This document shows positions 9,967 to 42,735 of a stretch of 64,000 bases of DNA, piece by piece. Below the pieces are notes generated by a model, which had not been told where the DNA came from, ran no database searches, and saw nothing but the letters and a program-made list of their open reading frames with translations. The stretch comes from Zygnema circumcarinatum SAG 698-1b (lineage: Eukaryota > Plantae > Zygnematophyceae): the NCBI GenBank assembly GCA_037447605.1, contig CM074811.1:2356001-2420000 (forward strand), given 5' to 3'. Positions within the stretch are counted from its first letter, which is position 1; each line of letters opens with the position of its first letter. The position numbers were made by a program, and so were the translations under genes.

Positions 9967-12900
9967 ATGGAGCTAACTTATCTCCGCCAGCTGGTGGCGG
10001 CCATTTCCATTTTTGTACTCCTGTTCCTTCCGACGGTCTTGGCAGGTCAAATTTCTCGTGGCCTTAAGAATGCTAATAATGCCCTTTGAAGATTAGCTCG
10101 CTTGTAATGGCTCCATACTGTTATCGACATATGCAGGCGGTTTGTACTTATTTGGTGTGCCCTTGAAAAGGACCTTTGGACAGGGACTGACATGCTTCAT
10201 TTGGCAAATGTTTCTGGAGATTTTATTATCTTAATTAATGGCGATACCTAGTCCGTCGGTGGTGAGCTTTGTGTCTCAGCTTGTCCAATCGAAGTTCCAT
10301 TTTTTGGGCCCGAAATGCGCTAACAATGTTTGCAGGCGTGTTTTCTGGGGATGGACAGTTGACTGTGGTGCGGACCTGCCAGGCTACTTGTACTATGAAA
10401 ATACGGACTATCCCGGCGCCTACACATCAAAAACAGGTTCAAGAACATCTTTAAAGTCGTGCGCAAGATTATGTGCAAACAGCCGGATCTGTCAAGCCTT
10501 TATTTTTTCCCCGAATGCTTCCAATCCTAGTGTAGGAAGATGTTTCTTCAAAAAGACATTGGGGACACCGGTCGCTAAAATGAACACGGCTACATACGTC
10601 GCATGTACTCCGTCTTTGTCATCTCGTAAGTATTTTCTTCCTTTGTACCCTAATTTTCGTCTGGTTTCCAATTTGTATTCGAGTGCAGATCCGCGAGAAA
10701 CAGGCAGCTTGTTGATGTAGCTGAATGGTCGCGCAAAATGTTTACTTTTGGTCTTGTTGAAAGCAGCTGCACGTGCTTTTCAACCCGGCTTGTCTGTCCG
10801 TTTCTACTTACTGATGAAGCTCTTAGCATGCTGTGATTTTTGCATCATTTGCTGGTTCCAACTTCAGCTTTAAATTCCTTTAGTGTTGAGTAAGTTGACA
10901 CTCGGAACTGTGGCAGCCATCTGCAGTGCGACCGAGGAAAAGTTTCAGCTGTATGCGAATCGATTGTTCAAGGGCGCTGATTACAGGAGTCAGAAAGGAA
11001 CTGCTACCGCTTGCACTCTAAGTTGCAGACGAGATTCGAAGTGTCGAGCAGTCTCCCATGATCTCATCTCAGGTGTCTGTTCCTTCAAAAGGGCCATTCC
11101 TACGGAGCAGAAACCGTACGTGGACCTAAATACGTATGTGAAATGCGATCCGGGTGAGTGAATATGAATCTCTGACGTCAGGTTTACCAGCCTCTTTCGC
11201 TCAAGCTTTGTGCACAGTATGCTTGACAATTAGTAGCGTCTGATAAGCGAAACAGCTGAACGGCGTGGTCTGATAGTTACTGTTATCGTGTTTTTTTATC
11301 CCGGGCCATACTCCTATTTCTTACCTTTTAGTGAAGAACTTCACTGCCGAACCTCGGGTTCTGCTATTTACGAAAAAAAATAGAACCGGGAATAATTTTG
11401 CTGAAAATTATGTCGAAACTGAGTGAGTGACTCAAATAGTATAACTTGTAAGTTATCTTAATGAAAAACCTTCCTGACTTCGGCAGGAGACCCTGATCAC
11501 CTTTCAACTGTATGTCACTGATTTGAGAAAAAATGAAGGATTTTTAATGTCTGCGAATTTTACGTTTGTGTAGCACACATTCACCATAAAATTTGGGTTG
11601 AAGATCCACAAATGGAAACATATATTTTGTCCCTGGAGTTGTATAATTTCTCAGCCTACCTTCAATCCTCGTCTGTCATTCATCCCGCATCCCTGTATCT
11701 GTAAACTCGGCAAGTATAGTCTGTCGCCCTTCGACTTTTTGGCAGGGACTAAAACCAAACGGGCATGCTTTGCAGGTCCCTCGACCTTCAATATTCTTCA
11801 TTTTAATGACATACACTCGCGGATAGAGCCAGCTGATAACAATGGCGTGCTTACCTGTACTTCTAATGCAGGTCAGGCCTAATAAAGGTTGCTCTTTCCC
11901 GTTATGCATACACAGAGAGAGAGAGAGCGAGCGAGAGAAAGAGTGAGATACGGCGATAGCGAGCGAGAGACAGGTCGAGATAGATAGAGAGAGTGCGAGC
12001 GAGAGAGGGAGTGCCCCACCTCGAGCCCTTGCGGATAGTCTTTTTCCCATAATTACTTGAGCTTTCGTCCATTTTCCTAATTTCGGTTCTGTTGCTAACT
12101 GAAGGAGGGATGAGGGATTTTCTTCGGAGCTAGCAGACTGGAGCTGTAACTGAGCGCTGAAGCTGTGATTTTGACTAGAATAAAAATACATTGTTCTCTT
12201 GGGTTACAATGAAGCGCCTTTGGACCTGCGGTTAACACGGGCGTACTGGTTCGCAGACCTATGCTATGGTGGCTTTGCTCGATTATCCACTCTGGTAGAT
12301 GCAACTCGAGCGGAGGGGCCAACACTTGTCCTTGATGCGGGTGATGAGTTTGTTGGCACTCTTTACAGCTACCTTTATCGTGGCCTTGAGGCCTACACTT
12401 TCCAAAACTACCTCAACATCGATGCCATGGTGGGTGCAAGAGTCCGCTTTAATTTCTTTTGCCTATAACAACCCAAGCAATTGAAAATTTCGACCTTTTT
12501 GGCATGTCAAGGTAAGGAGGCACCTTCCTTAATCCCTTATGATTAGAGCTGGTGGATAGAAGTTCGAGCTCAGTAATGTAAATTTTGAGATACGACTACG
12601 TACTAAGTACAGTACCGCAGACATTCAGATCAACATCTGCAACACCAGTTCTATGATCTGAACATCGTATCCCTCAAGCATTTTAAGTCATAGGTCCAAT
12701 AAAAATCACCAGAACCTTGCACTTCTTTCCTTTTGGAATTAACTCGTGGTTTCATATTTTGTGTTTTTCTCTTCATTTCTTCATTCCTCCCCGAAAAAAA
12801 TCACAAATGTGTTTGTCACTAACTCGAGCACATGGTGCTCTCCACATTCCCAGACGCTCGGGAACCACGAATTTGACTATGGGCCGGCAACTCTCGCTTC

Positions 12901-15900
12901 ATACGTCAAGAACCTCACGTTCCCTGTGACCACGTGCAATGTCGTCCCCAAGCAGAACAGCGAACTGTATGGACTCGTGAAGCCGGGCCCGCTGATTGTC
13001 ACACTTAAGATGAAGAGCGGCAGCTTGGTGAGGGTCGGCATTGTGGGATGGACCATCCCCACCACTCCGAGCCTATCCAGCCCCGGACCCAACATAGACT
13101 TTTTGCCCCTCGTGTCCTCTGTCCAAGCGTGCGTGGACCAGTTGGAGAGTCAGGGGGTGGAAATCATCATCGGACTTGGGCATGCGGGTCTGCAAGATGA
13201 TGGAGACGTTCTGGTCGCCAAAAATGTGAGAGGTGCGTACTTGCTGCTCGCCTCAATTTCATGCATGCTCTTTCGTCCACTTTACAACTGTGTTTTAAAG
13301 AATGCCACATCCAGGTGATTCAACGCAAAGGTGGACTAAAGCCTAAGCCTCCCATTTCTTTTCTGCTGCTTTTGCTTTGAGGAATTCTCACTCTAGTTTG
13401 GTCGACGACATGCGAGGATCCCGATAACTATGTCGCCATTGGTAGTCTTATAATGCTGTGGTAGCTTCGTCATGCATCTCATCCGTTTTTATCTCTCTTC
13501 TCTTGCTTAGTTCCAGAGGAAAGCCAACTGCAACTGGTCAATCTGAAATTTCTCACTATTTCTTCAATAGAGTGGCCGAGTTTGTGTAGAGAGAGTTGAG
13601 TTGAGTGAGAGGTATTCTGCACAGGGGTTTATTGTCCTTTTGTATGCCTTTGGTTTTACTGTTTCTGTGACTACCGAGATGTCTTCGATGCCGCTACATT
13701 CCCAGCATCCTCCTGTTAGCCTTCGTTCTTCCTCCATAGACTTTTTGATCCCAATTCTAAGGGAAACAAGTCTTTTAATCTATCGCATCATTTTTGGACT
13801 CCGGAAGAGGCCTTTGGATGAATTTCAAGGCTGAGTGGGAGCTTTGAGTGTGCCAAAACCAACCAACTGTCCCCCCCTGGAATGGTCAGAGGACGTTCGA
13901 TTCGGGTTTCTCTTGAAGTCCTTCATGCGTAAATTTTTGAGAGGATGGCAGGTCTGGACCTTGTGATCGGCGGGCACAGCCACACCTTCCTCTACAACGG
14001 GACGGGGCCAGTCCTCAACCTCAACAACCTCGCCACGCGCGACACTCCTTTGCTGCCAGACTTCACCTACCCATACCCTGTTGTAGCGGACTATGACTCG
14101 TCAGTGGTGGTGCCCTACTACCAGGCCTACTACGCGAGCAAGTAAGCGATGCAGTTACTTTTCTTTACCGATATGCCTGTCTCCTTGCATCGACAGCAAA
14201 ATTTTATGGTATAGGAAGATGTCGAAGTGTTCGTCAAATAATATTTTTCTTCTGGTGCATCCTCAGAGAGGCATGCGTTGCTTTGCTGAAATGCGCAATG
14301 AATTGAAGACATCAGTGTGATGGCTTTATTAACACAGTGTTTATGGATTTTCGTGGGTGCAATTGCTCTTGCATTCAGTGGTCGTATTCAATCAGCTGAA
14401 GAATCCATTGGTTTTGAATTGAAATTACGTGGAAACTTCTATCCTGCAGGTATATAGGTATCATCTCTGTTACATTCGACAGCTCCGGGAACTTTGTCAG
14501 CAAGTCTGGCTATCCCATTCTGCTTGGGGGCAAGAACAGCTCCAACAATGTGGAACAGGATCCAAACGTTACAGCACTGGTGGACACATTGGCTGGTCCA
14601 TTGGCTGCTTTCCGTAGCACCGTTGTTGGGTCGTCAAGTGTGTTTTTGAATGGCGTCAGAGAGGTAGTGCGGACTATGGAGAGCAACATGGGAAATCTTA
14701 TCACTGTAAGCACCAATACTACATTCCCGTGGGTGCCGAATAGGCCGAATAGGCAAACCCTTCAAAACTACCTGACTGCCCGAGGCTCCTTGCTGCTTCT
14801 TTCAGTGCACCATAGCATCATGCATCGTTTTCAAAGTGGTTGCATATACGCATATGAAACTGAACAATACTCAGACGACCTTCCGTTAATGAATATGTAT
14901 CCATCGCATTTACCAATTTTCTACATTTCGCCTCTGCAGGATGCACTTCTATGGGAAATAAAGCGGAATCCTAGCTTTGAAGCCAACTATGGTCCCATCG
15001 ACATTGCGATTACCAATGGCGGTGGTATTCGCAGTCCTATCAGTGCCGGAGACATCTCTGTCGGAGCCGTCATCACGGTGCTGCCATTTGGCAATGTGCT
15101 GGCGATCAAGAAGGTGACAGGGGCCCAGCTGAGAAGCATACTCAGTGCGTCAGCTGACAAGTGGAGCACCGCGAGTCCTAATGGCGGTTTCTTGCAGGCA
15201 AGCAACCGTGCTCTGATTTGAACTTGCTTGATCAAGCACTCAACCGTGGGCTGTTTTTGGCACTCAACTCACTCTGTTTCAAGGAAACTAGGATAACCGA
15301 GGGCGTAGATGTGCAATTGGTCTAACAGGCTCCGACCTACTTGACTAACTGCATTTATTTTTCCTTATTGGATTCGCACACACACGGCAGGATTATAAAA
15401 CTCGTTTCATAGTATGCAATGTTGTTTCTCCTCCAGGTGTCTGGCGTTTATTACGCATTTGATACCAACCAGGCGGCAGGGGCTCGCCTCCTTGAAGCCA
15501 AATTGTTGAATTCGGTGACCAAATGCCTGTCACCTATTGTGGACTCCACTTTATACAATGTCGTAACAAACGACTTCACTGGCAATGGTGGTGATAACTA
15601 TCCTGATTTGAAAGCAGCACCCACAGTCTTCGCCTCAGGCCGTGTGCTCAGTGACATTGTTGGTGACTATATTGGAGCTTTCTCTCCTGTCAGCCCGACT
15701 GTGGAGGGACGCATTCGTGTAATCAGTGGGACACCATACACATCTACACCAACGTGCTACTCATCAGAAACGTGCCAGTTAACACCGAGCTCCTACCTTT
15801 GCACTGCTGGTGAGGGTCTTGGACTTTTTCAGTCTCTTGATGTGAGACACAATGGAGCTGTTTATCGAGAGGGGACCACTTCGATCTACCGAACGCACGA

Positions 15901-18900
15901 CTTGATGCTGAAGTTCAATGAAAATGCGTCTCAACAATTGTTTCATGTTATACCTTTCCAAATCTAAAAGAGCTGTCCCAGATACTTGACATGGAAATGC
16001 GGCGTTGCCCTTTTACAGTCGGGGTACTGGCAAGAATTGCTTATATTTGTTCCATCGTCTGCTGGCTGGCAGGTCCCGACACAGTCCAAACATTCACCAT
16101 CGTTCACTATAATGACATCCACTCTCGCGTTGAGCCGGCTGACAACTCAGGAGCGTTGACCTGCGCGTCTAATGCAGGTTTGCCGATAAATGCTTTCGGA
16201 ACCTCACTACCACATGTTTTCCCACTCTGTTTCGTTCTCCCATGACACTTGTTTTTGTCGGCTGTCTAGGTTATGGATTACAGAGGATGATTCTCAAATC
16301 GGTTTCCTTCCCCGCCCCTCCCTCCCCCAACCCCCCTTCCTTTACCCCTTATTCATTGCTTCAGGTGCCTGGTTTGTAGACTTCTAAATATCCAGTTACA
16401 CCAATATATTCTGATGGCCTTCGCAATCGATACTGACGCGCCCCGGTGCTCCTATTCCACCACTGCAGTTTGCTTGACTGTTTGCCACTGAGTAGATTAC
16501 AGACTTCTTGTAGTGCTGATTTTTAACGAACTAGATGCATTTATCGATTCACAGAATCTCAGTTTATGAGTCAGTTGCGACCTAGAAAATGGTCTCCCTA
16601 CTTCGAGAAGTGGAACTTGCAAGCGTTTCTGTTCATCGTGTACTAAAGGTTTACTTGACCGCTCAATGCATGGCTCGCCAGATCTCTGCTATGGAGGGTT
16701 TGCGCGACTTTCAACGGTTGTCAGTGAAGCTCGGGCAGAGGGCCCGACCTTGTTGTTGGATGCGGGAGACCAGTTTGTGGGCACTCTGTACAGTTATCTG
16801 TATCGTGGAGCAGAGGCCTACCCCTTCCAGAACTACATGAAGACTGATGTTATGGTGAGTGGACTGAGGCAATTTCACATCCATGTGCTCCTGATGTTGA
16901 TTATGGCACATTGGCTTTCTCAATTGGCGACCCAATGGACGCCTGCTCCATGCCAGTATAGTCATGTTGTCACAGTGCTTCCATAGGTTCTGGCTCTCCT
17001 TGCTGTCGCCTGCAAAGCTGTCTTCGTTTTTTTTTATTTCTTCTTTGGTTTGGCCTATTCCAGACTCTCGGCAATCACGAGTTCGACTACGGGCCGGAGG
17101 GGTTGGCTGCGTACCTCAGAAACCTCACCTTCCCTGTGGCCACCTGCAACGTCGTCCCCAAGGCGAGCAGTGTCCTGTACGGCCTTGTGAAGCCGGGCCC
17201 TGTCGTGCTCACCCTCGCCATGCCGGACGGGTCCGCGCTGAAGGTCGGCATCGCCGGGTGGACCATCCCCACCACTCCGAGCCTGTCCAGCCCCGGACCG
17301 GACATCGACTTTCTGCCGCTCGTGGCCTCCGTCCAAGCGTGCGTGGACGACCTCAAGAGGCAGGGGGTGGACATTGTCATCGGATTGGGCCATGCGGGTC
17401 TGCAAGATGACGGAGACATCCTGGTCGCCAAGAATGTACCGGGTGAGTCTGCACGTCTTTGTATTTTGCTGGGCCACCCGCAAGATAAGACGCAATGTCG
17501 AGAACTCAACCGGTACAGTTGACCAACCTCAGGAGGTATTCTTCGTCGGTGTGGCCGCTTCACTAGCACTTTGTATTTGATTTCTTATAACCATAGGAGC
17601 AGAGCAAGGGTCACGAATCTGGAGGAAGGAAAGTTACATAGAATAGCCCGAGGTATGCATTAGCCGAGGTTATGTTACTGAGTGGAAAGTACAGCCATCG
17701 CAAATCCTTGGCACTCTATCTTCTACTTGAGGGCAACTGTGTCCTACGCGGCCATGAAACCCTCTTGCGAACTTTATAGCCTGCCCTTGAGTAGGGCATG
17801 ACAGGTCCTGGGAGGAGGTGGCAGGTTTGGACCTTGTGATCGGTGGGCACAGCCACACCTTCCTCTACAACGGGACGGGGCCAGTCCTCAACGTCAACAA
17901 CCTCGCCACGCGCGACACTCCTTTGTCGCCAGACTTCACCTACCCGTACCCTGTGGTGGCGGACTATGACTCCTCAGTGGTGGTGCCCTACTACCAGGTC
18001 TACTATGCAAGCAAGTGAGATAACTTCTGCTGCTCCTCATTTGCCATTATGATTATACGCACTGACAAGCGGCAAACGAAGGAATACCTTCATTCTGATG
18101 CTCAGCTCTGTACACGAGAATGAGTTTGTGAGGTTAAGGCTGACATATGATTCTTCGTCGGCAGGTACGCAGGCAAAATTTCTGTCACTTTTGACATCTC
18201 TGGCAATATTGTGAGCAAGTCCGGTTATCCTATCCTTCTTGGTGGCCAGAACAGCTCCAACAATGTCGCATCAGACCCTGTTGCTGTTGCCAAAGTGGCG
18301 GAGCTCTCTGGGGCCCTCGCGGCTTTCCGCAGCAAAGTAATTGGCTCCTCTGCAGTGTATCTGAATGGCGAAAGGAGCACGGTGCGGAGATTTGAAAGCA
18401 ATCTCGGCAACCTTATCACGGTAAGTCTCAGGTGCATTTTGGAAAGGATCAATTTCCTCTTGTCGGGGAATTCTTGTATTGTTGTCCCTTACTTTCCTTG
18501 AGCCTTCTGCGAGGATTCCTTTGACCTTCAGTTTTGTAGGTCAGGTTTCTTGGCCCTCCAGCTGACGAATCAAATGTGACGGCCGTCGACCCAGTCCACC
18601 AATAAAGTGGATGGAGATTGGTGTTTTATGCCACTAGCATTTTGTTTGAGAGAGGAGGCAGAAGTGGTGTATTATGCTGGGAAAAGTCCAGATCAGCTAG
18701 TTCGTTCAAGCTTTGGTTAGCCTGAAGAGTTGTTTGATCATGTTTTGGTGAAGGCCGCTGGAGGAAAAAGTAAATGACACTGTTTTCTTTATCTTCTTTC
18801 TTTGTTATTTTCTACTTACCACCATCAGGATGCCATGATTTGGGAGGTGAAGAGAAACCCCAACTTTGAGTTGAATTATGGGCCTATCGATATTAGCGTG

Positions 18901-19822
18901 ATGAATGGAGGTGGCATCCGATCCCCCATTGCAGCAGGCAGCATCACTGTTGGTGACGTCATCACTGTGCTGCCCTTCGGCAATGTGCTCACGATCAAGA
19001 AACTGACAGGGACTCAGTTGAGGGGCGTTCTTACTTACTCTGCCGACAAGTGGAACGCCTTTTCTCCTAGTGGAGGCTTTCTCCAGGCAAGTATTGTGCC
19101 CTTGAGAATTTTCTTCTGGCAAGTCTCCATGCGTCAGCGGAGATGGCTGTGGTTCAATGGTCAATGTGAAAGCACAGATGCGCAGGACTGCAGTGAAAGG
19201 AATGGCAGATCTCAATTGTAGCGCTGACTGAGTGGAGCAGGCAATGCGCTGCCGGGCATGGTGCAGGTCTCAGGCGTGTACTACGCGTTTGACAACAGCC
19301 TGCCAGTTGGCTCGCGCTTTCTTGAAGCGAAGCTGCTGAACCCCGTCACGAAGTGCCTCTCTCCCATTGTGGACTCCGCGTTCTATAACGTCGTCACCAA
19401 CGACTTCACAGGTGCCGGCGGAGACAACTTCCCTGACTTCGCGGCAGCGCCCACAGTCTTCCCCTCGGGACGCGTTCTCAGCGACATCGTCAACGACTAC
19501 ATCGGCACCTACTCCCCCGTCAGCCCTACGCTGGAGGGCCGCATCCGCGTGGTCAACGGAGCCACGGAGTCCTACACTCTCACGCCGACCTGCACATCCT
19601 CGCAGACGTGCTCCCTCACGCCAACCGCCTACGCCTGCGTCGGCTGTAAGTGTCTTCCTGCCCGGATCTCTCTTTCGGGAGGAGACCCTTCCTAGTGAAG
19701 ATAAAGCGGAAAGTCAGCTTTTTTGTAGGGAATTTTCTTCAAGCAATTTTCTTCTTCTGCTGAGCCTGTCAAGGCAATTCTCCAACCTCCAAACGCCGGG
19801 CCCTGCTGGTTTATGTGCAGAA
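9967..19822 (+). CDS. Gene A: secreted PAN/Apple x2 + tandem 5'-nucleotidase (CD73/UshA family) x2, about 1349 aa
   Basis: Exons 9967-10045 (SP MELTYLRQLVAAISIFVLLFLPTVLA), 10359-10625 and 10917-11153 (PAN, CxxxC..C..C pattern). Module 1: 11776-11871, 12257-12429, 12854-13232, 13952-14141, 14450-14705, 14940-15197, 15437-15809. Module 2: 16073-16177, 16682-16854, 17064-17442, 17825-18014, 18165-18420, 18829-19086, 19267-19645. Stop completed at 19821-19822. Total 4050 nt, in frame. Motifs NDIH, DAGD, GNHEFD, GHAG, GGHSH, NGGGIR, LPFGN, GGFLQVSG and GGD occur in both modules. Confidence 0.9.
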
Positions 19823-20389: not shown

Positions 20390-20580
20390 GGGGAAAATGA
20401 CATTGACCTCACGATGGCGAGGCCATCAAATGTACATAGACAAACGCAGCAGTAGGAACCACGAGGGACTGGTCGCAAGGGACCTAAGCACAAACGAAAA
20501 AAGCAAGGAGCGGAAAACTACGCCTAGGCGCAACAACGCAGCCCTCCCTAGAAGCAGCTGCGAAGGTCACCGATGTGCGG
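20390..20580 (-). repeat. Dispersed repeat family R1 copy
   Basis: Reverse complement matches the copies at 6640-6845, 52135-52296 and 61396-61550. Confidence 0.75.
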
Positions 20581-28037: not shown

Positions 28038-29222
28038 GGAGAACTATATACCGCCCCCCTTTTTTGGTTATCCCGCCACCGTTTTTTTGAAATCCGACCC
28101 TCCCATTTCGGCTATTCTGCCCCCCTCCCCCATTTTGGATATTTCGGGAGGAGATCGCCCCCCTGTTTTGAATATTTCTTTCCCGCCCCTCCCGTCCTCT
28201 CCCCTCCCCTCCCCTCCCCTCCCCTGCCCTCCCCTCCCCTTCCCTGCCCTCCCCTCCCGTCCTCTCCCTCCCCTCCCCTTCCCTGCCCTCCCCTCCCGTC
28301 CTCTCCCTCCCGTCCACTCCCCTCCCCTGCCCTGCCCTCCCCCGTCCTCTCCCCTCCCCTCCCCTGCCCTCCCCCTCCCCTCCCCTTCCCCTTCCCTGCC
28401 CTCCCCTCCCGTCCTCTCCCCTCCCCTCCCCTGCCCTCCCCCTCCCCTCCCCCTCCCCTTCCCTGCCCTCCCCTCCCGTCCTCTCCCCTCCCCTGCCCTC
28501 CCCCTCCCCTCCCCCTCCCCTTCCCTTCCCTTCCCTGCCCTCCCCTCCCGTCCTCTCCCTCCCCTCCCCTACCCTCCCCCTCCCTCCCCCTCCTTCCTGC
28601 CCTCCCCTCCCGTCCTCTCCCCTCCCCTCCCCTTCCCTCCCCTGCCCACCCCTCCCACCCCTCCCTTCCCTTCTTCCTCTCGGTTTGCAATTTCCACACA
28701 AATGACTGAGTATAAGACTCGCGATGAGCTTGTACAAGAAGAAGACACAAGACGAATCCTTCCTTCTTGCACTACAAGAAGGAAGGATTTCACATCAAGA
28801 TCGGCAAGCATAGCGATAGCCGCCGACTCTACTTGCAATGCTTTAGCCGGGGGACCTACGAGGACAGAGGTCTGGAAGAGAGTAGTAAGAAGAGGAATAT
28901 CTCTCCTCTGCTCTTTCTCCTCTAGTCTTTCTCTCCTCTACTCTTTCTCCTCTGCTCATTCTCTCTCTCTCCTTTGCTCTCTTCTATGCTCTCTCCTCTA
29001 GTCTCTCTCCCCTTTGCTCTCACTCCTCTACTCACACTCTCTCTCTCCTCTGCTCATTCTCTCGCTCCTTTGCTCTCCCCTCTAGTCTCTCTCTCCTCTA
29101 CTCTCACTTTGCTCTTTCTCTCTCCTCTATACTCTCTCTCCTCGGCTCTCGCTCCTTTGCTCTCTCTCTCTCTTCTCTCTCCTTTGCTCTCTCCTGTAGT
29201 CTCTCTCCTCTACTCTCACTCT

Positions 29223-29274
<52 letters not shown>

Positions 29275-29585
29275 CTCTGCTCTCTCTCCTCTAGTCTTTC
29301 TCTCCTTTGCTCTCTCCTGTGCTCTCTACTCTAGTCTCTCTCTCCTTTGCTCTCACTCCTGTGCTCACTCTCTTTCTCTCCGTTGCTCTCTCTCTTTCTC
29401 TCCGTTGCTCTCTCTCTCGAATGTTGCGCTGATGTGTGAGAAGGAGAAAACGGGGGGGGGGGAATATCCAAAATGGGGGGGCGGGATATTTCAAAATAGG
29501 GGGCAGAATAGCCGAAATGGGAGGGTCGGATTTCAAAAAAACGGTGGCGGGATAACCAAAAAAGGGGGGCGGTATATAGTTCTCC
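28038..29585. mobile_element. Non-autonomous MULE-like element with long TIRs
   Basis: Near-perfect inverted repeats of more than 80 bp (GGAGAACTATATACCGCCCC... / ...GGGGCGGTATATAGTTCTCC) and an 8-bp direct flank TTTTTCTT. Interior is C- and CT-rich. Inserted in an R1 copy. Confidence 0.75.
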
Positions 29586-30512
29586 TTTTTCTTTTGTGCT
29601 TAGGTCCTTCGCGACCAGTTAGTTCCTCGTGGTTCCCCATGATGCTGATGTTGTCCATGTACATGTGATGGCATCATCGCCATCGTGATATCAATGCCAC
29701 ATCCCTTTCTTCTTAAAAGAAAATAAGAAGGGAAATCGGGGAAGTGGCATTGATCTCACGATGGCGAGGAGGCCATTAAAGAAGAAGAAAGAATATAAAA
29801 GAGAGGGTTTCATTTTGCCTCCTTTTGGTCACCCTCCGGCTTCCCAGCCAATTACAAACTGGAGCCGCACCTGCGGGGGTCCCGCAAAAAAAAAATGAAT
29901 GAAAGAAACCTGAATCGCGGCGGGTTTGACAACTGATCTGCGGACGGAACTGAAACCGAATGTTTGCATGGAACGGCTCTCGTCTCCGGCACCGGCGCCG
30001 CCAGACTCGCTGTCGGCGCTCTAGTGGACAACGGAGTCCGGGGCCGCACCGCCGGATTCCAACGGCATCTTTTTGGCGTGACCCCCGCCGCCGTTCCAAC
30101 CCGACAGGCATCTCGTGTCGCTTCCACAACCGACAGCATCGGCTGACGCATCGCATTGCGGAATATTCCACGTTGACAACAGGATCTGACGTGGCCCCCG
30201 CGCTGTGGCGCCTCTCAAACCAAGAAGCAGCTTCAATTGAGCCACGTGGCACTGGTGTCCGACGTGGCAGCAGTGCTACCGACAATTCCCCATTTCTGCG
30301 CGGCACTGTGCAGCAGGGGATCGGCCGCCGGGCGGCGGCAGCATGTACGACCGCGGGAGGCGGCTGGCGGCTGCCAGTCCGCGGCGGAGGGGGCAAAGGG
30401 AGAGGGAGAGGGAGAGGGAGAGGGAGAAGGAGAGAGGGGAAGGAAAGGAGGGAGAGAGGGAGGGAGAGAGGGAAGGAGTGAGGACTAGCTGGCAGGCGGA
30501 GANNNNNNNNNN

Positions 30513-31099
30513 CCCTTCCCTTCTTCCTCTCGGTTTGCAATTTCCACACAAATGACTGAGTATAAGACTCGCGATGAGCTTGTACAAGAAGAAGACACAA
30601 GACGAATCCTTCCTTCTTGCACTACAAGAAGGAAGGATTTCACATCAAGATCGGCAAGCATAGCGATAGCCGCCGACTCTACTTGCAATGCTTTAGCCGG
30701 GGGACCTACGAGGACAGAGGTCTGGAAGAGAGTAGTAAGAAGAGGAATATCTCTCCTCTGCTCTTTCTCCTCTAGTCTTTCTCTCCTCTACTCTTTCTCC
30801 TCTGCTCATTCTCTCTCTCTCCTTTGCTCTCTTCTATGCTCTCTCCTCTAGTCTCTCTCCCCTTTGCTCTCACTCCTCTACTCACACTCTCTCTCTCCTC
30901 TGCTCATTCTCTCGCTCCTTTGCTCTCCCCTCTAGTCTCTCTCTCCTCTACTCTCACTTTGCTCTTTCTCTCTCCTCTATACTCTCTCTCCTCGGCTCTC
31001 GCTCCTTTGCTCTCTCTCTCTCTTCTCTCTCCTTTGCTCTCTCTCTCTCTTCTCTCTCCTTTGCTCTCTCCTGTAGTCTCTCTCCTCTACTCTCACTCT

Positions 31100-31151
<52 letters not shown>

Positions 31152-32377
31152 CTCTGCTCTCTCTCCTCTAGTCTTTCTCTCCTTTGCTCTCTCCTGTGCT
31201 CTCTACTCTAGTCTCTCTCTCCTTTGCTCTCACTCCTGTGCTCACTCTCTTTCTCTCCGTTGCTCTCTCTCTTTCTCTCCGTTGCTCTCTCTCTCGAATG
31301 TTGCGCTGATGTGTGAGAAGGAGAAAACGGGGGGGGGGGAATATCCAAAATGGGGGCGGGATATTTCAAAATAGGGGGCAGAATAGCCGAAATGGGAGGG
31401 TCGGATTTCAAAAAAACGGTGGCGGGATAACCAAAAAAGGGGGGCGGTATATAGTTCTCCTTTTTCTTTTGTGCTTAGGTCCTTCGCGACCAGTTAGTTC
31501 CTCGTGGTTCCCCATGATGCTGATGTTGTCCATGTACATGTGATGGCATCATCGCCATCGTGATATCAATGCCACATCCCTTTCTTCTTAAAAGAAAATA
31601 AGAAGGGAAATCGGGGAAGTGGCATTGATCTCACGATGGCGAGGAGGCCATTAAAGAAGAAGAAAGAATATAAAAGAGAGGGTTTCATTTTGCCTCCTTT
31701 TGGTCACCCTCCGGCTTCCCAGCCAATTACAAACTGGAGCCGCACCTGCGGGGGTCCCGCAAAAAAAAAATGAATGAAAGAAACCTGAATCGCGGCGGGT
31801 TTGACAACTGATCTGCGGACGGAACTGAAACCGAATGTTTGCATGGAACGGCTCTCGTCTCCGGCACCGGCGCCGCCAGACTCGCTGTCGGCGCTCTAGT
31901 GGACAACGGAGTCCGGGGCCGCACCGCCGGATTCCAACGGCATCTTTTTGGCGTGACCCCCGCCGCCGTTCCAACCCGACAGGCATCTCGTGTCGCTTCC
32001 ACAACCGACAGCATCGGCTGACGCATCGCATTGCGGAATATTCCACGTTGACAACAGGATCTGACGTGGCCCCCGCGCTGTGGCGCCTCTCAAACCAAGA
32101 AGCAGCTTCAATTGAGCCACGTGGCACTGGTGTCCGACGTGGCAGCAGTGCTACCGACAATTCCCCATTTCTGCGCGGCACTGTGCAGCAGGGGATCGGC
32201 CGCCGGGCGGCGGCAGCATGTACGACCGCGGGAGGCGGCTGGCGGCTGCCAGTCCGCGGCGGAGGGGGCAAAGGGAGAGGGAGAGGGAGAGGGAGAGGGA
32301 GAAGGAGAGAGGGGAAGGAAAGGAGGGAGAGAGGGAGGGAGAGAGGGAAGGAGTGAGGACTAGCTGGCAGGCGGAGA
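30513..32377 (+). repeat. Near-identical copy of 28663-30502 across an N gap (probable assembly artefact)
   Basis: Starts immediately after the 10 N at 30503-30512. Differs only in microsatellite and homopolymer length. Confidence 0.85.
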
Positions 32378-34063: not shown

Positions 34064-37000
34064 ATGGCCACTTCTTCAGCGGCGCGTGCCACGTGGATTG
34101 TCGGCCTCGTTCTCGCTCTGGCTCTTCTCCCGGCGGCCCTTGCAGGTGCATTGCACATCCCGCTTTCAACATGGGCTGCTTCTATGCAAGTGCTCATTTG
34201 CGCCGAATCCAACGAAACTGTTTCCTTAGTTTCAATTTTCTGCATGTTCCTTGTTCTGGTCGGGTCATTCAAATACCCCCCTTCTAAAAACCGTGCGCAT
34301 TATTTCCTGTGAATGTACAGAGGATTGCAGTGCGAGCCTCCCCGGGTACCGCTCGTACCCGAGCACCGAGTACACGGGCCCCTTCTACGCGCACGACACT
34401 TTCCGGACCCCTCTGCGGCTATGCGCACGCGCGTGTGCCTTCAACCCCTCCTGCAAAGTGTTCCTCTTCTGGCCGAGCCCCAACGCGCCGGGCACCGGCC
34501 GGTGCTACTACAAGAGCGCGCTGGGGACGCAGCGCGCCAACGCCTCCGTCACTGCGTACGTTCCATGCAACAACGCTGCGGTCGAACGTGAGCTTCGCCA
34601 CCCGCGTCTTCTGTCTGCCTTGTGTGGGGACATTCACCAATGATTCGCTTTCTTTCAAGTCGTTGCAAGGCTTTCGACCATGCTTGAAATGTTTCAATAG
34701 TTACAAGGCTCACCTGCGGCTCGCATGCTTCATGTGTGCAGCCGTGTGCGGCGCCGCGGAGCCGGGCATGAAGCTGTACTTGGACCGGCAGTTCGGCGGC
34801 CCCGGCACGTACTCGACCGCGGCGGCGGCGAGCGGCGCGCAGTGCGCGGCCGCGTGCCGCCTCGACGCGAACTGCGCGGCGGCCGCGCACGACGCCGTCA
34901 AGCGCGTCTGCGCGCTCAAGCGCGCTGTGGCGCCCAAGTCGGCGCAGAAGCCCTTTGCGGACATCAACACCTACGTCAAGTGCGACCCGGGTCAGTCAGT
35001 CAGCGCTGCCATACAGAGAGACAGAGAGAGAGAGAGGGGAGAGAGGGGAGAGAGAGAGAGGAGAGAGATGGGAGATAGAGAGAGAGAGCTGCCTGCCTCA
35101 CGGGACACGTGTGCACCCCTCGCGTTGCTATTCATATGCTGGGACTAACTCCAAACAGTTTGGTTCTGCAGGCCCTTCGACTTTCACCATTGTCCATTTC
35201 AATGACATACACTCTCGCGTTGAACCGGCTGACAACAGCGGCGTGCTCAGCTGTACTTCAAACGCAGGTGAGGACCAGATAGCGGATATTCTCTCTTTCC
35301 TCTCCAAAGGAATCACGTTCCTCATGTTTCCTCGAAGGGCCGGAGTTTGTGCTACTACATTCTGAACTGCTTTTGTCGCCATGGTTCTAACGTGTCCATA
35401 CTGTTTTCCAGACCTATGCTATGGTGGCTTTGCCCGCCTGTCCACTGTGGTAGATGCGGCCCGAGCGCAAGGCCCCACTCTGCTTCTTGATGCGGGTGAC
35501 GAGTTTGTCGGCACTCTGTACAGCTACTACTATCGTGGCAAGGAGGCCTACGTTCCTCAGAACTACCTCAAGATTGACGCCATGGTGAGTGGACTTTACC
35601 ATCCGTCCAAGTACTTTTTTCTCATGTCCAAGCCTGGATGTGGAAGTTTTGTGTTTCTGGTTCGGCAGGTACAACACAGCAATATTGTGTAGGTGATTCG
35701 GACATTACCGGGACATGCCGGTAATTTGCATATGCATTTTTTCCCCTCATGTGGTTGCAATGCATATCTTGCTTCACATCAGAGCGTTAATGTCAGTAGT
35801 TCCTATTACCTGGTGTCCTGCATTATATACTGTGCAACTGCTTCTACAATCTGCACGCTATATAGCCCTCAGCCACAGTCTAAGTGGCGGTAAACCGCCG
35901 CTGGCCCACGCTGGAGGGTCGGCCTTGGCTGTCAATCGGCTTACGAATCCTCATGCATTGGAGTACTTCTAGCAGGCATGCCTCCCTCCTTCCCTCATGG
36001 AGCTTCAAGTGTCCCTTTCTCACTAACTCGAGCACATGGTGCTCCCCACATTCCCAGACGCTCGGGAACCACGAATTCGACTATGGGCCCGCAACTCTCG
36101 CTTCATACGTCAAGAACCTCACGTTCCCTGTGACCACGTGCAATGTCGCCCCCAAGCAGAACAGCGAACTGTACGGACTCGTGAAGCCGGGCCCGCTGAT
36201 TGTGACTCTTAGGATGAAGAGCGGCAGCTTGGTGAGGGTCGGCATTGTGGGATGGACCATCCCCACCACTCCGATCCTGTCCAGCCCCGGACCCAACATC
36301 GAATTTTTGCCCCTCGTGTCCTCTGTCCAAGCGTGCGTGGACGAGCTCAAGAGTCAGGGAGTAGGTATCATCATCGGGCTTGGGCATGCGGGTCTGCAAG
36401 ATGATGGAGACGTTCTGGTCGCAAAGAATGTCCGAGGTGCGTACTTGCTGCTCGCCTCTCGTACACCTCTTGATTCTTCTTCAAAGGCCTACTTTTGCGA
36501 TTCAGATTTCCCCGTTTATTTTAGGACCGTTTTTCAACTTAACTTGGTTAAGTAAAGTGTGAGGAATGGCAGTGCAAGTTTTGGATTACTTCACGACGCA
36601 CTGCTTTTTGAGAGGATGGCAGGTCTCGACCTTGTGATCGGCGGGCACAGCCACACCTTCCTCTACAACGGGACGGGCCCAGTCCTTAATCTCAATAACC
36701 TCGCCACACGTGACACTCCTTTGTCGCCAGATTTCACCTACCCATACCCTGTTGTAGCGGACTATGACTCGTCAGTGGTGGTGCCCTACTACCAGGCTTA
36801 CTACGCGAGCAAGTAAGCGATGCAGCTAGTTTGCCTTCACTCGCGTCCCCCCTCGTCTTTGACTCCATGATTATGATGCATGGAGTAAAGTTGTTTTGAT
36901 GTTTCCTTTCTCGTGGAGCTTATCAAAGCATAACGAATAGCTACTGCTGCTTTTCAAATTGTCTGGACTCCTCATGGGTGTTGGTTTCATCAGTGCTTCA

Positions 37001-40000
37001 AGTCAATTTTCTGTTCATGCTTACCTGTGGCAATTGCACCGTGTATTAACTGCGACATTCAGTCACATGGCCAAGCTCTAAACAGTTCTATCCGTGGTGG
37101 TGCTGAATTGGTCGATCGTGCAGGTACCTTGGTAACATCTCTGTCACCTTCAGCAGCTCAGGGGACCTTCTTAGCAAGTCTGGGTATCCCATTCTGCTCG
37201 GGGGCAGGAACAGCTCCAACAATGTGGAACAGAATCCCAATGTTACAGCTCTGGTGACCACATTGGCTGGCCCATTGGCCGGATTCCGCAACACCATTGT
37301 TGGGTCGGCAAGTGTGTATTTGAACGGCGTGAGGGACTTTGTGCGGACTCAGGAGACGAACTTGGGCAACCTCATCACTGTAAGGCCCCTCTCTTGCTTT
37401 TACGACCAGGATTCCGAGTATGCGAACATTGAACAACGGTCTTTGAATGCCTTCTTAGCTCACTCCACTCTAGGACACAGGAACGCGGGAGAAAACTAGT
37501 CGAGAAAATCAAGAATATTTTGGTGATGTGTTTGCATGCATCGAAGTCGCTAATGTTTTCGATGCGGCTCTGCAGGATGCACTTATTTGGGAAATTAAGC
37601 GGAACCCTAGCTTTGAATCCACTTACGGCTCCATCAGCATTGCAGTCACCAACGGCGGCGGCATTCGCAGTCCAATCAACGCTGGTGACGTCAGCGTGGG
37701 AGCCATCATCACGGTGCTGCCTTTTGGCAATGTGCTCGCAATCAAAAAGGTGACGGGAGCCCAGCTCGTAAGCATACTCAGTGCGTCGGCGGACAAGTGG
37801 AACAACACCAGCCCTAACGGGGGGTTCCTACAGGCAAGAAAGCCATCTCTGTGATCGATACTGTTGCTCTTTTTGATATCATCGTGATGGTCAAGAAAGT
37901 ATATAAGCGCGCGCAGTGTCTGAAGAGGTTTGGACCAATGAGACGGACCTCTCTTTCCTGGCGAATGCAAGTGCAAGTTGGTGTAAGGGCATCCTACTTT
38001 CACCTCCCACCTTTAGCAGGGCGGCGGACCTTCACCTAGAGCTAATAATGGCGTTTCACGGTGCAGGTGTCCGGCCTGTACTATGCATTTGACACCACCA
38101 AGGCGGTAGGAAGCCGCCTCCTTGAAGCCAAGCTGTTGAATCCCGTCACCAAATGCCTATCACCTATCGTGAGCACCGCCTTTTATTATGTCGTCACGAA
38201 TGACTTCACCGGTGCCGGTGGCGACAACTTTGCCGACTTGAAAGCAGCCCCCACGGTGTTCGCCTCGGGCCGTGTGCTCAGTGACATTGTCGGCGATTAC
38301 ATCAGAACCTTCTCCCCCGTTAGCCCGGTCGTGGAGGGACGCATTCGATCGGTCAGTGGGACAACGTACACACCGACACCATCATGCGGCGCACTCCAAA
38401 CGTGCCAGTTGACATCGAGCTCCTATTCTTGCAATGGCGGTGAGGGTCCGGAACACCTTAAATCTCTCAACTAGCATGTGCAGAACACAGGCTAGCGGTT
38501 ATATGGAGGGGCCAACTTCCACCTGCTGGATGCTTTGTTTGTTTCTGAACTCGTGTCTCACTAGTTGCTTGGTGTTACGCCTCTGCACTCTTGAATGAGC
38601 TGTTAAAATATAGTCGACATGGAAATGCGACGTTGTCCTTTCAAGGTCGGGGAGCTGGCAAGAAGTGCTTTAATTGGATGTTTCATCAGTGGCGGTTGGC
38701 AGGTCCCCAGACGTTCACTATCATTCATTACAATGACATCCACTCTCGAGTTGAGCCGGCTGACAACTCAGGAGCGTTGAACTGCGCGTCTAATGCAGGT
38801 TTGCCTTTTAATGCTTTAACCTCACCAAGTTTCTCCACTGGGTTGCATTCTTTCATGAACCTGTTCTTGTCGTCAGTTGAAGTTACGGATAACAGAATAT
38901 GAATTTGAACTCGGTTTCCTCCTATTCCTCCATCCTTGCCACTTTTGTTTTTCAGGAGCCCACTTGGCTGTTTTCTGCTTAATTGTTTGTCACCGAATAG
39001 ATTGCGTGTTCATTGCAGGGCGTAAGCTCATAGATTCAGCGAATTGGATGCATTTATTCGATTCATTCAATTCATGAGTGAATTGCGACCTAGAAAATGG
39101 TCTCCCTACTTCGAGAAGTGGATCTTGCAAGCGTTTCTGTTCAGCGTGTACTAAAGGTTTGCTTGACCGCTCAATGCGTGGCTCGCCAGATCTCTGCTAT
39201 GGAGGGTTTGCGCGACTTTCAACGGTGGTCAATGCAGCTCGGGCAGCGGGCCCGACCTTGTTGTTGGATGCGGGAGACCAGTTTGTGGGCACTCTGTACA
39301 GTTATCTGTATCGTGGAGCAGAGGCCTACCCCTTCCAGAACTACATGAAGACTGATGTTATGGTGAGTGGACTGAGACACTTTCACATTCATGTGCGCTT
39401 CTAATGTTGAATATGAGCGTCAATTTGGAGAATTCACATTCAAATATCAAGGTTGTTTGTTTGTTGGTCGACTGCTGGAAATTTCATGTCGTGGATTTGT
39501 AATAGCCTTGTAACGTTAGTGCTAAAAATGCGATTTCAGGTTGTGCAAATTGATTCGTTTATTCTTCATGTTCATCTTGATGAAGAGATGGGTGCAATGT
39601 CACGCCTTAATGCATTTTGTCTGTCAGTAGTCTACGCAATGCACATTGGCTTTCCCAGTTGGCGACCCAAAGGACACCCTGCTCCATGCCAGTATAGTCA
39701 TTCTGTCACAGTGCTTCCATAGGTTCTGGCTCTCCTTGCTGTCGCCTGCAAAGCTGTCTTCGTTTTTTTTTATTTCTTCTTTGGTTTGTCCTATTCCAGA
39801 CTCTCGGCAATCACGAGTTCGACTACGGGCCGGAGGGGTTGGCTGCGTACCTCAGAAACCTCACCTTCCCTGTGGCCACCTGCAACGTCGTCCCCAAGGC
39901 GAGCAGTGTCCTGTACGGCCTTGTGAAGCCGGGCCCTGTCGTGCTCACCCTCGCCATGCCGGACGGGTCCGCGCTGAAGGTCGGCATCGCCGGGTGGACC

Positions 40001-42735
40001 ATCCCCACCACTCCGAGCCTGTCCAGCCCCGGACCGGACATCGACTTTCTGCCGCTCGTGGCCTCCGTCCAAGCGTGCGTGGACGACCTCAAGAGGCAGG
40101 GGGTGGCCGTCATCATCGGATTGGGCCATGCGGGCCTGCAAGAGGACGGCGACATTTTGGTCGCCAAAAGCGTGACGGGTCAGTCTCCAAGCGCGTCTCT
40201 GTCGTTGCTGAAAACTGATGGTAACGTGAATCTGAGAACTATGAAACTGGAACTGAGAACTGCAAGTCCCGTTCGTCGTGTTTGAACATAGAAAATCCGT
40301 ACGTTCGCCGTGGGCCGTACGCCTGTGACATACCGTACGTCACCCGAAAGTACTGTACTGTACTGACGGCGTTTTCGTACAGTACTTTAGTGTACGAAAA
40401 TCCAAGAAATGCGCATGTGAGATGGCCAGATGGGCGATGAGGAATTGGCCACAGATGCCCTTAGAACGTGGAAAGAGCAGCCGTGCTCGCTTCCAGGCTC
40501 GAGGGATTCATGGGCCGAGCTCATATGCAGTGATAGAAAGTTGGGGCTTTGGCAAATGTTGGGCCATCTCTCTTACCTTTTATCTGAGGGCGTCTGCGTT
40601 CTACGCAGCCATGTCCCAACTGAATCCGTTCAACTGAAAGCATATACCCTCATATGTATGCCGCTGGGGAGGTTGATGGTTAGCTGGCTGCTTTCGGGTA
40701 GGGCTTGACGGGTCCTGGGAGGAGGGGGCAGGTCTGGACCTTGTGATCGGCGGGCACAGCCACACCTTCCTCTACAACGGGACGGGCCCAGTCCTTAATC
40801 TCAATAACCTCGCCACGCGCGACACTCCTTTGTCGCCAGACTTCACCTACCCGTACCCTGTGGTGGCGGACTATGACTCGTCAGTGGTGGTGCCCTACTA
40901 CCAGGTCTACTACGCGAGCAAGTGAGATACTATCTGGTGCTCTTTATTCGCATCAATTTGAAGGATAAGTTGGAGCAAGAACCGAATCGGGGAATGCTTT
41001 TCATTCTGATGCTTACCTCTGTACGTGAGCATGGGTTTTTGAAGTTGAGACTAAGATATGGCTGTTGGTCTGCAGGTATGCGGGCAACATTTCTGTCACC
41101 TTTGACATCTATGGCGACATTGCGAGTAAATCCGGCTATCCTATCCTTCTTGGTGGGCAGAACAGCTCCAACAATGTCGCATCAGACCCTGTTGCTGTGG
41201 CGAAAGTGGCGGAACTCTCTGGGGCCCTCGCGGCTTTCCGCAGCAAAGTCATTGGCTCGGCTGCAGTGTATCTGGATGGCCAAAGGAACACGGTGCGGAG
41301 ATATGAGAGCAATTTCGGCAACCTTATCACTGTAAGTCTGCGTCTTGTCTAGGAAATACTGTATTGTTGCCCCTTACGTGCACGGACCGTTCTGCGTGGA
41401 TTCCTCTAATATTCACTTTTCTAGGTCAGGTTTCTGGGCACTCCAGCCGTCGAACCAAATGTTACAGCCGAGGAGTCAGTCCACCAATAAAATGGATACA
41501 GATGGGTGTTTAATGTCACTTGCATTTTGTTTGAGAGAGGAGGCAGAAAGTGGTCTATAATGCTGGGAAAAGTCCAGATCAGCTAGTTCGTTCAAGTTTT
41601 GGTTAGCCTGAAGAGTAGTTTGATCATAGTATGTTTTCGGTGAAGGCCGTTCTACATTGACTTCCGTTTTGGAGGGTCAATCAGTGTTTGTGCCCAGGAA
41701 TTGACAAGTTTTTATTTTTCCTTCTTATGTTGTTTTCTACTTGCCACCATCAGGATGCCATGGTTTGGGAGGTGAAGAGAAACCCCAACTTTGAGTTGAA
41801 TTATGGGCCAATCGACATCAGCATGATGAATGGAGGTGGCATCCGATCCCCCCTTGTAGCAGGCAACATCACTGTTGGAGACGTCATCACTGTGCTGCCC
41901 TTTGGCAATGTGCTCACGATCAAGAAACTGACAGGGACTCAGTTGAGAGGCGTTCTCACTTACTCTGCCAACAAATGGAACGCCCTTTCTCCCAATGGAG
42001 GCTTTCTCCAGGCACGTACTTGTCCTTTGAAAATTTCCTCATTGCAAGCCTCCATGCGTCAGCGGAGGTGGCTGTGGTTCAATGGTCAATGTGAAAGCAC
42101 AGATGCGCAGGACTGCAGTGAAAGGAATGGCAGATCTCAATTGTAGCGCTGACTGAGTGGAGCAGGCAATGCGCTGCCGGGCATGGTGCAGGTCTCAGGC
42201 GTGTACTACGCGTTTGACAACAGCCTGCCAGTTGGCTCGCGCTTTCTTGAAGCGAAGCTGCTGAACCCCGTCACGAAGTGCCTCTCTCCCATTGTGGACT
42301 CCGCGTTCTATAACGTCGTCACCAACGACTTCACAGGTGCCGGCGGAGACAACTTCCCTGACTTCGCGGCAGCGCCCACAGTCTTCCCCTCGGGACGCGT
42401 TCTCAGCGACATCGTCAACGACTACATTGGCACCTACTCCCCCGTCAGCCCTACGCTGGAGGGCCGCATCCGCGTGGTCAACGGAGTTACGGAGACCTAC
42501 ACTCTCACGCCGACCTGCACATCCTCGCAGACGTGCTCCCTCACGCCAACTGCTTATACATGTGTCTGTAAGTGCGCTTTTGCCCGTTTTCTCCCTCAAA
42601 ATGTGAGCCTGTCCTCGTGGAGACAAGGTGGAGGATTCACCGCTTTCAAGTCTGTCTGTGCTTGCAGGCAGTGCTGGGCATGCGAATGCAGTTTCCTCAC
42701 TCTGATTGCTGTGTTTTCGCGATCTGTGTGCAGAA
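34064..42735 (+). CDS. Gene C: secreted PAN/Apple x2 + tandem 5'-nucleotidase x2, about 1350 aa
   Basis: Exons 34064-34145 (SP MATSSAARATWIVGLVLALALLPAALA), 34321-34587, 34742-34990. Module 1: 35172-35267, 35412-35584, 36058-36436, 36623-36812, 37124-37379, 37576-37833, 38067-38439. Module 2: 38703-38798, 39190-39362, 39800-40178, 40732-40921, 41076-41331, 41754-42011, 42192-42567. Stop completed at 42734-42735. Total 4053 nt, in frame, with all catalytic motifs present. Confidence 0.9.

What the first reader, a model, noticed from the sequence alone, without database searches (positions are those of the whole stretch)
9967..42735. Tandem family of secreted PAN/Apple-PAN/Apple-5'-nucleotidase (x1 or x2) proteins
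Seen in sequence: three intact spliced genes with signal peptide, two PAN-like exons and five complete nucleotidase modules in total. Every module keeps the dimetal ligands (DxH, GD, GNH, GH, GHSH), the C..CYGG cysteine pair seen in CD73, and a Cys/Thr-rich tail. There is no C-terminal hydrophobic GPI or TM signal. Established: CD73/UshA/insect-apyrase enzymes normally have one metallophosphoesterase plus one C-terminal domain, and PAN/Apple domains mediate glycan or protein binding. I do not recognise this fused architecture from any characterised protein. Inference: an ecto-nucleotidase tethered to the wall or mucilage, for scavenging organic phosphate or removing extracellular ATP/AMP/NAD signals. 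The double module could act as a covalent pseudo-dimer (CD73 works as a dimer) or a two-step relay.
Basis: partly seen in the sequence, partly recalled or inferred. Interest (0 to 1): 0.9.

Follow-up and report, generated by a model that had tools for sequence, protein, structure and literature searches.

The report
Algal PAN-tagged secreted nucleotidase genes
Three neighbouring genes of a green alga close to land plants encode a secreted nucleotide-splitting enzyme of a well-known family that has gained two small binding modules, probably to hold it at the cell surface; I found this combination nowhere else, but the doubled enzyme unit is common and the job is only inferred.

Summary
Observation confirmed. 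Three intact + strand genes (1349, 771, 1350 aa) encode signal peptide, PAN, PAN and then two, one or two UshA/CD73-family 5'-nucleotidase modules. All introns are canonical and no frame has a stop. The assembly gap is intergenic. All six PAN exons pass the Pfam PAN_1 cut-off. Spliced contigs, presumably RNA, join signal to PAN1 (gene 3), PAN2 to enzyme (gene 2) and module A to B (gene 3). All five modules keep the metal and catalytic residues; gene 2 lost one phosphate-binding Arg. The enzyme belongs to an old green-algal lineage (Mesotaenium, Klebsormidium, Chlorokybus) whose fetched members lack PAN. No PAN occurred in the listed hits of three searches. Tandem modules are common in bacteria, algae and animals, so they are not new. 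The CD73 dimer cysteines are missing and modules A and B have the same active-site residues, so pseudo-dimer and relay are unsupported. Best reading (0.55): a surface-held, broad-range nucleotidase for scavenging phosphate; the tether and the purpose are inferred. The scan did not return this fusion on other DNA, but its unchecked notes list other PAN-tagged secreted enzymes in this genome. New variant of a known kind; interest 0.45.

The parts
9967..19822 (+). Gene 1: signal peptide-PAN-PAN-module A-module B, 1349 aa, 17 coding exons plus a last exon that completes the stop
   Evidence: own RNA support is only one exon-sized contig at depth 2
9967..10045 (+). Gene 1 signal-peptide exon (26 aa, hydrophobic core, A-x-A-type cleavage site)
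   Evidence: judged by hydropathy, no SignalP available
10359..10625 (+). Gene 1 PAN1 exon (phase 1-1, six Cys)
   Evidence: Pfam PAN_1 26.1 bits; fold; Atlas
10917..11153 (+). Gene 1 PAN2 exon (phase 1-1, six Cys)
   Evidence: Pfam PAN_1 23.0 bits
11776..15809 (+). Gene 1 nucleotidase module A (exons 4-10)
16073..19645 (+). Gene 1 nucleotidase module B (exons 11-17)
22531..27470 (+). Gene 2: signal peptide-PAN-PAN-module B, 771 aa; Arg354 (CD73 numbering) replaced by Ala, Gly391 by Ser
   Evidence: PAN2-to-enzyme splice in run X8
22937..23203 (+). Gene 2 PAN1 exon
   Evidence: Pfam PAN_1 26.6 bits
23381..23617 (+). Gene 2 PAN2 exon
   Evidence: Pfam PAN_1 21.5 bits against a cut-off of 21.4
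23618..23935 (+). Chimeric intron: 5' part like gene 1 intron 3, 3' part like gene 3 intron 10, switch near 23742; records the loss of module A
   Evidence: junction letters also in runs X8 and X18
23936..27312 (+). Gene 2 nucleotidase module (B type)
28663..32377 (.). Intergenic 1.84-kb direct duplicate on both sides of the gap 30503-30512; probably an assembly overlap
34064..42735 (+). Gene 3: signal peptide-PAN-PAN-module A-module B, 1350 aa
   Evidence: splices
34064..34145 (+). Gene 3 signal-peptide exon
   Evidence: spliced to PAN1 in run X9, 13 letters beyond the joint
34321..34587 (+). Gene 3 PAN1 exon (40% identical to gene 1 PAN1)
   Evidence: Pfam PAN_1 23.3 bits
34742..34990 (+). 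Gene 3 PAN2 exon
   Evidence: Pfam PAN_1 25.8 bits
35172..38439 (+). Gene 3 nucleotidase module A (exons 4-10)
   Evidence: three of its introns seen spliced
38703..42567 (+). Gene 3 nucleotidase module B (exons 11-17)
   Evidence: A-to-B joint in run X7, depth 11, 41 letters on the short side

Best explanation
Secreted, soluble enzymes of the UshA/CD73 family. Shown: signal peptide, two PAN domains, complete dimetal enzyme modules under purifying selection, and spliced joins between the parts. From family knowledge: each module clamps the base between two Phe in its C-terminal domain, swings it onto the two-metal site and releases phosphate plus nucleoside. Inferred: without the CD73 dimer cysteines, and with the extra Arg also seen in the Thermus enzyme, the modules work singly and take a broad range of substrates (AMP, ADP, ATP, perhaps NAD or UDP-sugars). 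Inferred: with no GPI or TM anchor, the basic PAN pair (pI about 9; enzyme modules pI 4.8-5.9) binds acidic wall or mucilage polymer and keeps the enzyme near the cell, so that phosphate freed from dissolved nucleotides is taken up. The second module raises activity per anchor rather than adding a step. History: an inherited algal enzyme was duplicated into A and B, acquired a signal-PAN-PAN cassette through phase-1 introns, and was copied in tandem; gene 2 lost module A by recombination inside an intron.
For: Gene models and split stop. PAN identity. Active-site table. dN/dS 0.15-0.20 between A and B modules. Spliced joins. Charge contrast. Fetched bacterial relatives carry LysM or SLH wall-binding domains on the same enzyme. 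Diatom 5'-nucleotidases are listed among organic-phosphorus hydrolases under P limitation (PMC8301168). Vibrio UshA frees phosphate from nucleotides and extracellular DNA (PMC4714964). Bacterial and fungal enzymes without the dimer loop are monomeric or predicted so, and broad in substrate (PMC6362346).
Against: No binding, localisation, activity or induction data exist. No P1BS motif in the 1.5 kb upstream of genes 1 and 3, and one in gene 2. Contig depth is low (2-16) and retained introns are common. In fungal copper radical oxidases the extra PAN or similar module is not needed for catalysis and its role is open (PMC11611005). Gene 2, the best-supported transcript, has lost a phosphate-binding Arg.
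Confidence: 0.55

Rival explanations
1. Signal-clearing enzyme: it removes extracellular ATP, ADP or NAD released on damage, microbial attack or conjugation, as the fungal E5'NT does in the root apoplast; nutrition is secondary.
For: Same family and probably the same broad range as Serendipita E5'NT (PMC6362346). No P1BS enrichment. Low depth in the runs laid.
Against: I did not test for a nucleotide receptor in this alga. An old family with repeated multiplication of modules suits bulk hydrolysis as well.
Confidence: 0.2
2. The PAN pair is a passenger: a signal-PAN-PAN exon cassette, mobile in this genome, replaced the old signal exon, and the protein acts as an ordinary soluble nucleotidase.
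For: Phase-1 exon borders make shuffling easy. The full-length relative P0003 and the Chlorokybus and Neomeris proteins have a signal peptide directly before the enzyme. PAN exons of genes 1 and 3 are only about 40% alike against 85% for module A. Unchecked scan notes list many PAN fusions in this genome.
Against: All six Cys and the fold are kept in all six copies, and the synonymous distance between gene 1 and gene 3 PAN1 was too large to estimate. Gene 2 lost a whole enzyme module but kept both PAN exons.
Confidence: 0.13
3. Nucleotide-sugar or NAD hydrolase of the secretory path or wall, trimming UDP-sugars or their by-products during mucilage secretion; the PAN pair binds a glycoprotein partner.
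For: UshA-type enzymes split UDP-sugars and NAD (family knowledge; names; weak NadN_nucleosid_C hit). Gene 2 has an altered phosphate pocket.
Against: No retention signal or anchor for the ER or Golgi; four of five modules have a standard nucleotide pocket.
Confidence: 0.1

Closest known systems
Green-algal members of the UshA/CD73 family (Mesotaenium ME000468S07823, Klebsormidium KFL_005470010, Chlorokybus Chrsp22S03523, Neomeris, Tetrabaena; none characterised that I found)
   Same: 59% identity to Mesotaenium, 40-44% to the others; one group in both trees; the Cys-rich tail is shared with Mesotaenium.
   Different: None has PAN. Mesotaenium ends in an EGF-like piece, Chlorokybus in a long Cys-rich tail, and two algal contigs carry Pro-rich rods between modules. 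The Mesotaenium and Klebsormidium models lack their N-termini, so PAN there is not excluded.
Bacterial 5'-nucleotidases: E. coli and Vibrio UshA, Thermus 2Z1A, LysM- and SLH-bearing forms
   Same: Two-domain module, all catalytic residues, the extra Arg seen in Thermus, no dimer loop, wall-binding add-ons, tandem modules.
   Different: Introns, eukaryotic signal peptide, disulfide-rich PAN pair in place of LysM or SLH; the algal modules form their own group.
Human CD73 (NT5E)
   Same: Metal ligands, H118/D121, C51-C57, N390, R395, F417, F500, D506 in all five modules; R354 in four.
   Different: No GPI signal, no C353-C358, no CxxC of the dimer loop, His at N245, extra Arg at S350, PAN pair.
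Serendipita indica E5'NT
   Same: Secreted enzyme of this family without the dimer loop; hydrolyses ATP, ADP and AMP (PMC6362346).
   Different: GPI-anchored, single module, no PAN, a fungal protein acting in the host apoplast.
PAN_1-bearing fungal copper radical oxidases (AA5_2; PDB 6RYV-6RYX, 6STX)
   Same: Secreted enzyme with an N-terminal PAN domain; ranks 2-5 in the fold search of PAN1 (PMC11611005).
   Different: Unrelated catalytic part.

Membership tests
UshA/CD73 5'-nucleotidase family | Calcineurin-like metallophosphoesterase domain followed by 5_nucleotid_C | tested here: met
   Exon-wise Pfam and PDB hits; the 58-59% identical relatives carry both domains
UshA/CD73 5'-nucleotidase family | Dimetal ligands and catalytic His-Asp | tested here: met
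   D36, H38, D85, N117, H118, D121, H220, H243 in all five modules (numbering bridged through)
UshA/CD73 5'-nucleotidase family | Substrate clamp R354, N390, R395, F417, F500, D506 | tested here: met
   All six in four modules; gene 2 has Ala at R354
UshA/CD73 5'-nucleotidase family | Hydrolysis of 5'-nucleotides | not testable with these tools
   Needs an enzyme assay
CD73 proper (animal ecto-5'-nucleotidase) | C-terminal GPI signal | tested here: not met
   Polar ends and a split stop; last splice not covered by reads
CD73 proper (animal ecto-5'-nucleotidase) | Dimer loop from Cys476 and the C353-C358 disulfide | tested here: not met
   One Cys in the loop region, Val and Ser/Thr at 353 and 358 (PMC6362346)
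CD73 proper (animal ecto-5'-nucleotidase) | Grouping with animal enzymes | tested here: not met
   Groups with streptophyte algae, apart from animals (quick trees)
PAN/Apple domain | Profile match above the curated cut-off | tested here: met
   PAN_1 21.5-26.6 bits against 21.4 for all six exons
PAN/Apple domain | Six Cys in the C-CxxxC-C-C-C pattern and hairpin-helix-sheet fold | tested here: met
   (no single Foldseek hit reached E 0.001, but all 50 listed were PAN/apple-fold proteins)
PAN/Apple domain | Glycan or protein binding | not testable with these tools
   Only the basic charge is known
Tandem multi-module 5'-nucleotidases with division of labour (YfkN-like, from memory) | Modules differ in active site | tested here: not met
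   A and B are identical at all 21 scored sites in genes 1 and 3, 75-77% identical overall

The most novel reading that the evidence does not exclude
The PAN pair is a reusable surface tag with which this alga assembles an extracellular route from nucleic acids to phosphate: a PAN-tagged DNase (scan note s1-350930, unchecked), these PAN-tagged nucleotidases, and secreted PstS-like phosphate binders (notes s1-319544, s1-365646, unchecked). It would be a plant-lineage counterpart of the Vibrio nuclease-UshA route, using an enzyme for which Arabidopsis has no secreted form.
Probability: 0.2. Interest if true: 0.7.

Novelty: new variant of a known kind. Interest (0 to 1): 0.45.

Why it matters
Arabidopsis has no predicted secreted enzyme of this family (PMC6362346), yet streptophyte algae keep it, and this species has amplified and re-fitted it. 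That gives a handle on how the algal relatives of land plants use organic phosphorus and clear extracellular ATP. The three genes also form a natural series (one or two modules, two diverged PAN pairs, one altered pocket) in which the unknown ligand of algal PAN domains can be tested with an easy phosphate-release assay. The chemistry itself is expected to be ordinary.

Tried and rejected
Gap artefact: rejected, the gap is intergenic. PAN and enzyme exons in separate transcripts: rejected for gene 2; the same joint was not seen for genes 1 and 3. Gene 2 as a mis-assembly: rejected, its chimeric intron junction occurs in two other runs. Hidden GPI exon: unlikely, a conserved acceptor gives a stop in all three genes. 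Recent bacterial import: rejected, best bacterial matches are about 40% or less and intron positions are shared with another algal contig. Pseudogenes: rejected (dN/dS). Homologue search with the PAN1 exon found nothing, which is uninformative given the length limit. Two metagenome scans gave no close locus. Paper searches found no PAN-nucleotidase and no held text on the UshA arginines, so the role of the extra Arg rests on my own knowledge. Supplements of two plant genome papers gave nothing. The species could not be identified; it is not Mesotaenium (59% identity). The careful tree did not finish; support labels are displaced by re-rooting and were not used.
Full report
Observation. I rebuilt the genes from the window by coordinates (one search used a wrong exon 2 acceptor and is superseded). 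Gene 1 (9967-19645) has 17 coding exons and 1349 aa, gene 2 (22531-27312) 10 exons and 771 aa, gene 3 (34064-42567) 17 exons and 1350 aa. All introns are GT-AG except one GC-AG intron at the same position in each of the five modules, and no frame has a stop. Each gene opens with a signal-peptide exon and two phase 1-1 exons with six Cys each. All six of these exons pass the Pfam PAN_1 cut-off. The Atlas returns PAN clusters at 0.95, and a model of PAN1 (pLDDT 86) matches only PAN/apple-fold proteins among the 50 rows listed, none at E 0.001 or better. The enzyme exons match 5_nucleotid_C and solved CD73, venom, Thermus and UshA chains.

The C-terminus. Each last coding exon ends on a T before a GTAAGT donor, at the position where module A splices to module B. 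A conserved acceptor 157-175 bases on supplies AA, so the stop codon is split by an intron in all three genes. The last 30 residues have mean hydropathy near zero. No GPI or TM anchor is predicted. This splice lay outside the stretch on which I laid reads.

The gap. The N run at 30503-30512 is intergenic. The 1.84 kb before it is repeated after it with no mismatches and two indels, which looks like two overlapping contig ends. No exon or frame depends on it; only the spacing of genes 2 and 3 is uncertain.

Expression. No run is on record as RNA, but four small-share runs laid on 34000-39999 give contigs that skip the predicted introns exactly, so they are very probably RNA. Seen: gene 3 signal exon to PAN1 (X9, 13 letters past the joint); three introns of gene 3 module A; gene 3 module A to B (X7, depth 11, 41 letters on the short side); and the gene 1/2 PAN2 exon joined to an enzyme exon whose six variant letters all match gene 2 (X8, depth 14). 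Gene 1 has only one exon-sized contig at depth 2. Limits: these are de Bruijn contigs that can switch between paralogues (the X7 contig goes on with gene 2 letters), retained introns are common, and depth does not rank genes.

Active site. Bridging through P0003 to CD73 numbering, all five modules keep D36, H38, D85, N117, H118, D121, H220, H243, the C51-C57 pair, N390, R395, F417, F500 and D506. R354 is present in four; gene 2 has Ala followed by Lys, and Ser at G391. All have an extra Arg at CD73 S350, as Thermus 2Z1A does; from my own knowledge this is the R375 position of E. coli UshA. C353-C358 and the CxxC of the CD73 dimer loop are absent. PMC6362346 links that loop to dimer formation and narrow specificity, and its absence to monomeric, broad-range enzymes. 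Modules A and B are 75-77% identical and the same at every scored site, so I find no support for a pseudo-dimer or a relay. dN/dS is 0.15-0.20 between A and B and 0.20-0.45 among the B copies.

Relatives. The nearest proteins are Mesotaenium ME000468S07823 (59%) and a full-length transcript, P0003 (58%), then Klebsormidium, Neomeris and Chlorokybus. In a quick tree the five modules form one group (SH-aLRT 97) with A and B subgroups (99 each), join Mesotaenium and P0003 (99), and lie with Klebsormidium and Chlorokybus (86-90) in a mainly algal group (100) apart from bacteria and animals. A second tree agrees in shape. A metagenome contig with a related multi-module gene shares intron positions. 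The enzyme is therefore inherited within green algae, and the A/B duplication is younger than the split from Mesotaenium. No PAN family appears among the 120 listed hits of each of two full-length searches, and a local PAN profile found nothing in the first 266 proteins fetched or in four related loci. These searches used surrogate queries and list only the best hits, and two algal models lack their N-termini, so uniqueness is probable, not shown. Tandem modules are common: bacterial doubles, Tetrabaena, Cymbomonas, Owenia, Plodia and two algal contigs with at least three; some database cases may be fused gene models. The same enzyme carries LysM, SLH, PhoD_N, Ig-like or carbonic anhydrase domains elsewhere, and PAN sits on fungal copper radical oxidases. 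Adding a binding module to this enzyme is thus a known theme.

History of the array. Gene 2 matches gene 1 from the promoter to about 23742 and gene 3 intron 10 from there on: module A was lost by recombination inside an intron, which the shared phase 1 tolerates. The exon with the GHSH motif is 94-95% identical between A and B, while its neighbours are 64-78%, which points to gene conversion. The PAN pair of gene 3 is about 40% identical to that of gene 1 and much richer in G+C (0.67-0.74 against 0.46-0.50), so the binding part diverges faster than the enzyme.

Mechanism. Most likely a secreted broad-range nucleotidase held at the wall or mucilage by a basic PAN pair (pI 8.8-9.1 against 4.8-5.9 for the modules), releasing phosphate for uptake (0.55). 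Parallels are diatom 5'-nucleotidases under P limitation (PMC8301168), the two-stage nuclease-nucleotidase route (PMC11528361) and Vibrio UshA (PMC4714964). Against it, the upstream regions show no P1BS enrichment and nothing has been assayed. Rivals: clearing of ATP or NAD signals (0.2), PAN as passenger (0.13), nucleotide-sugar or NAD turnover (0.1). Unchecked scan notes of a PAN-tagged DNase, a PAN-tagged SOD and secreted PstS genes in this genome suggested the novel case; they are leads, not support.

Method notes. All database searches and the fold prediction used single exons by reference or proteins returned by tools. The joined spliced proteins were not sent to any search or folding tool, so the whole-protein search and fold were left out. 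Joined models were built only inside scripts from the window file, for frame checks, local alignments, local BLAST against proteins already fetched, and trees. 

Verdict. Real, expressed at least in part, and an apparently undescribed domain combination in a known enzyme family: new variant of a known kind, interest 0.45.

Noticed in passing
window:40179-41331: In all four runs the deepest contig (47-108 against 2-16 elsewhere) carries gene 3 exon 14 letters; in three runs it begins 199-520 bases inside intron 13, and in X18 it is spliced on to exon 15. Internal start, retention or a truncated copy elsewhere; it could encode at most the last 209 aa, without a signal peptide. Unexplained.
   Followed up: partly
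window:1607-2575: Intronless gene for a secreted trypsin-like protein (Pfam Trypsin, E 4e-10) in which the catalytic His and Ser appear replaced.
   Followed up: partly
window:47300-49800: Minus-strand spliced gene that reads like a Gfo/Idh/MocA-type oxidoreductase (translation; not searched).
   Followed up: no
window:44500-47000: Plus-strand spliced gene of unknown kind starting near 44528.
   Followed up: no
window:24598-24808: Gene 2 intron 5 is retained in contigs of three runs and spliced in two (the spliced form cannot be assigned firmly to one paralogue).
   Followed up: partly
window:55838-64000: Three more 10-N gaps (55838, 60889, 63333), also flanked by near-identical duplicates such as 55848-56325 = 60914-61391 and 61284-61941 = 63343-64000; the same kind of assembly overlap or a collapsed repeat.
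   Followed up: no
window:6596-6817, 20385-20629, 29586-29776, 52112-52513, 61395-62019: A short dispersed repeat family in both orientations, 71-82% alike, with an inverted repeat at 29668-29776; possibly a small non-autonomous transposon.
   Followed up: no
L082:860-6700 and L084:500-11600: Algal-looking contigs with genes of three or more modules of this family, joined in frame or by Ser/Pro rods; some modules have lost catalytic or substrate residues.
   Followed up: partly
P0011, P0178: Other fusions of this enzyme: PhoD_N before two modules (P0011) and a carbonic anhydrase after one module in a bacterium (P0178).
   Followed up: no
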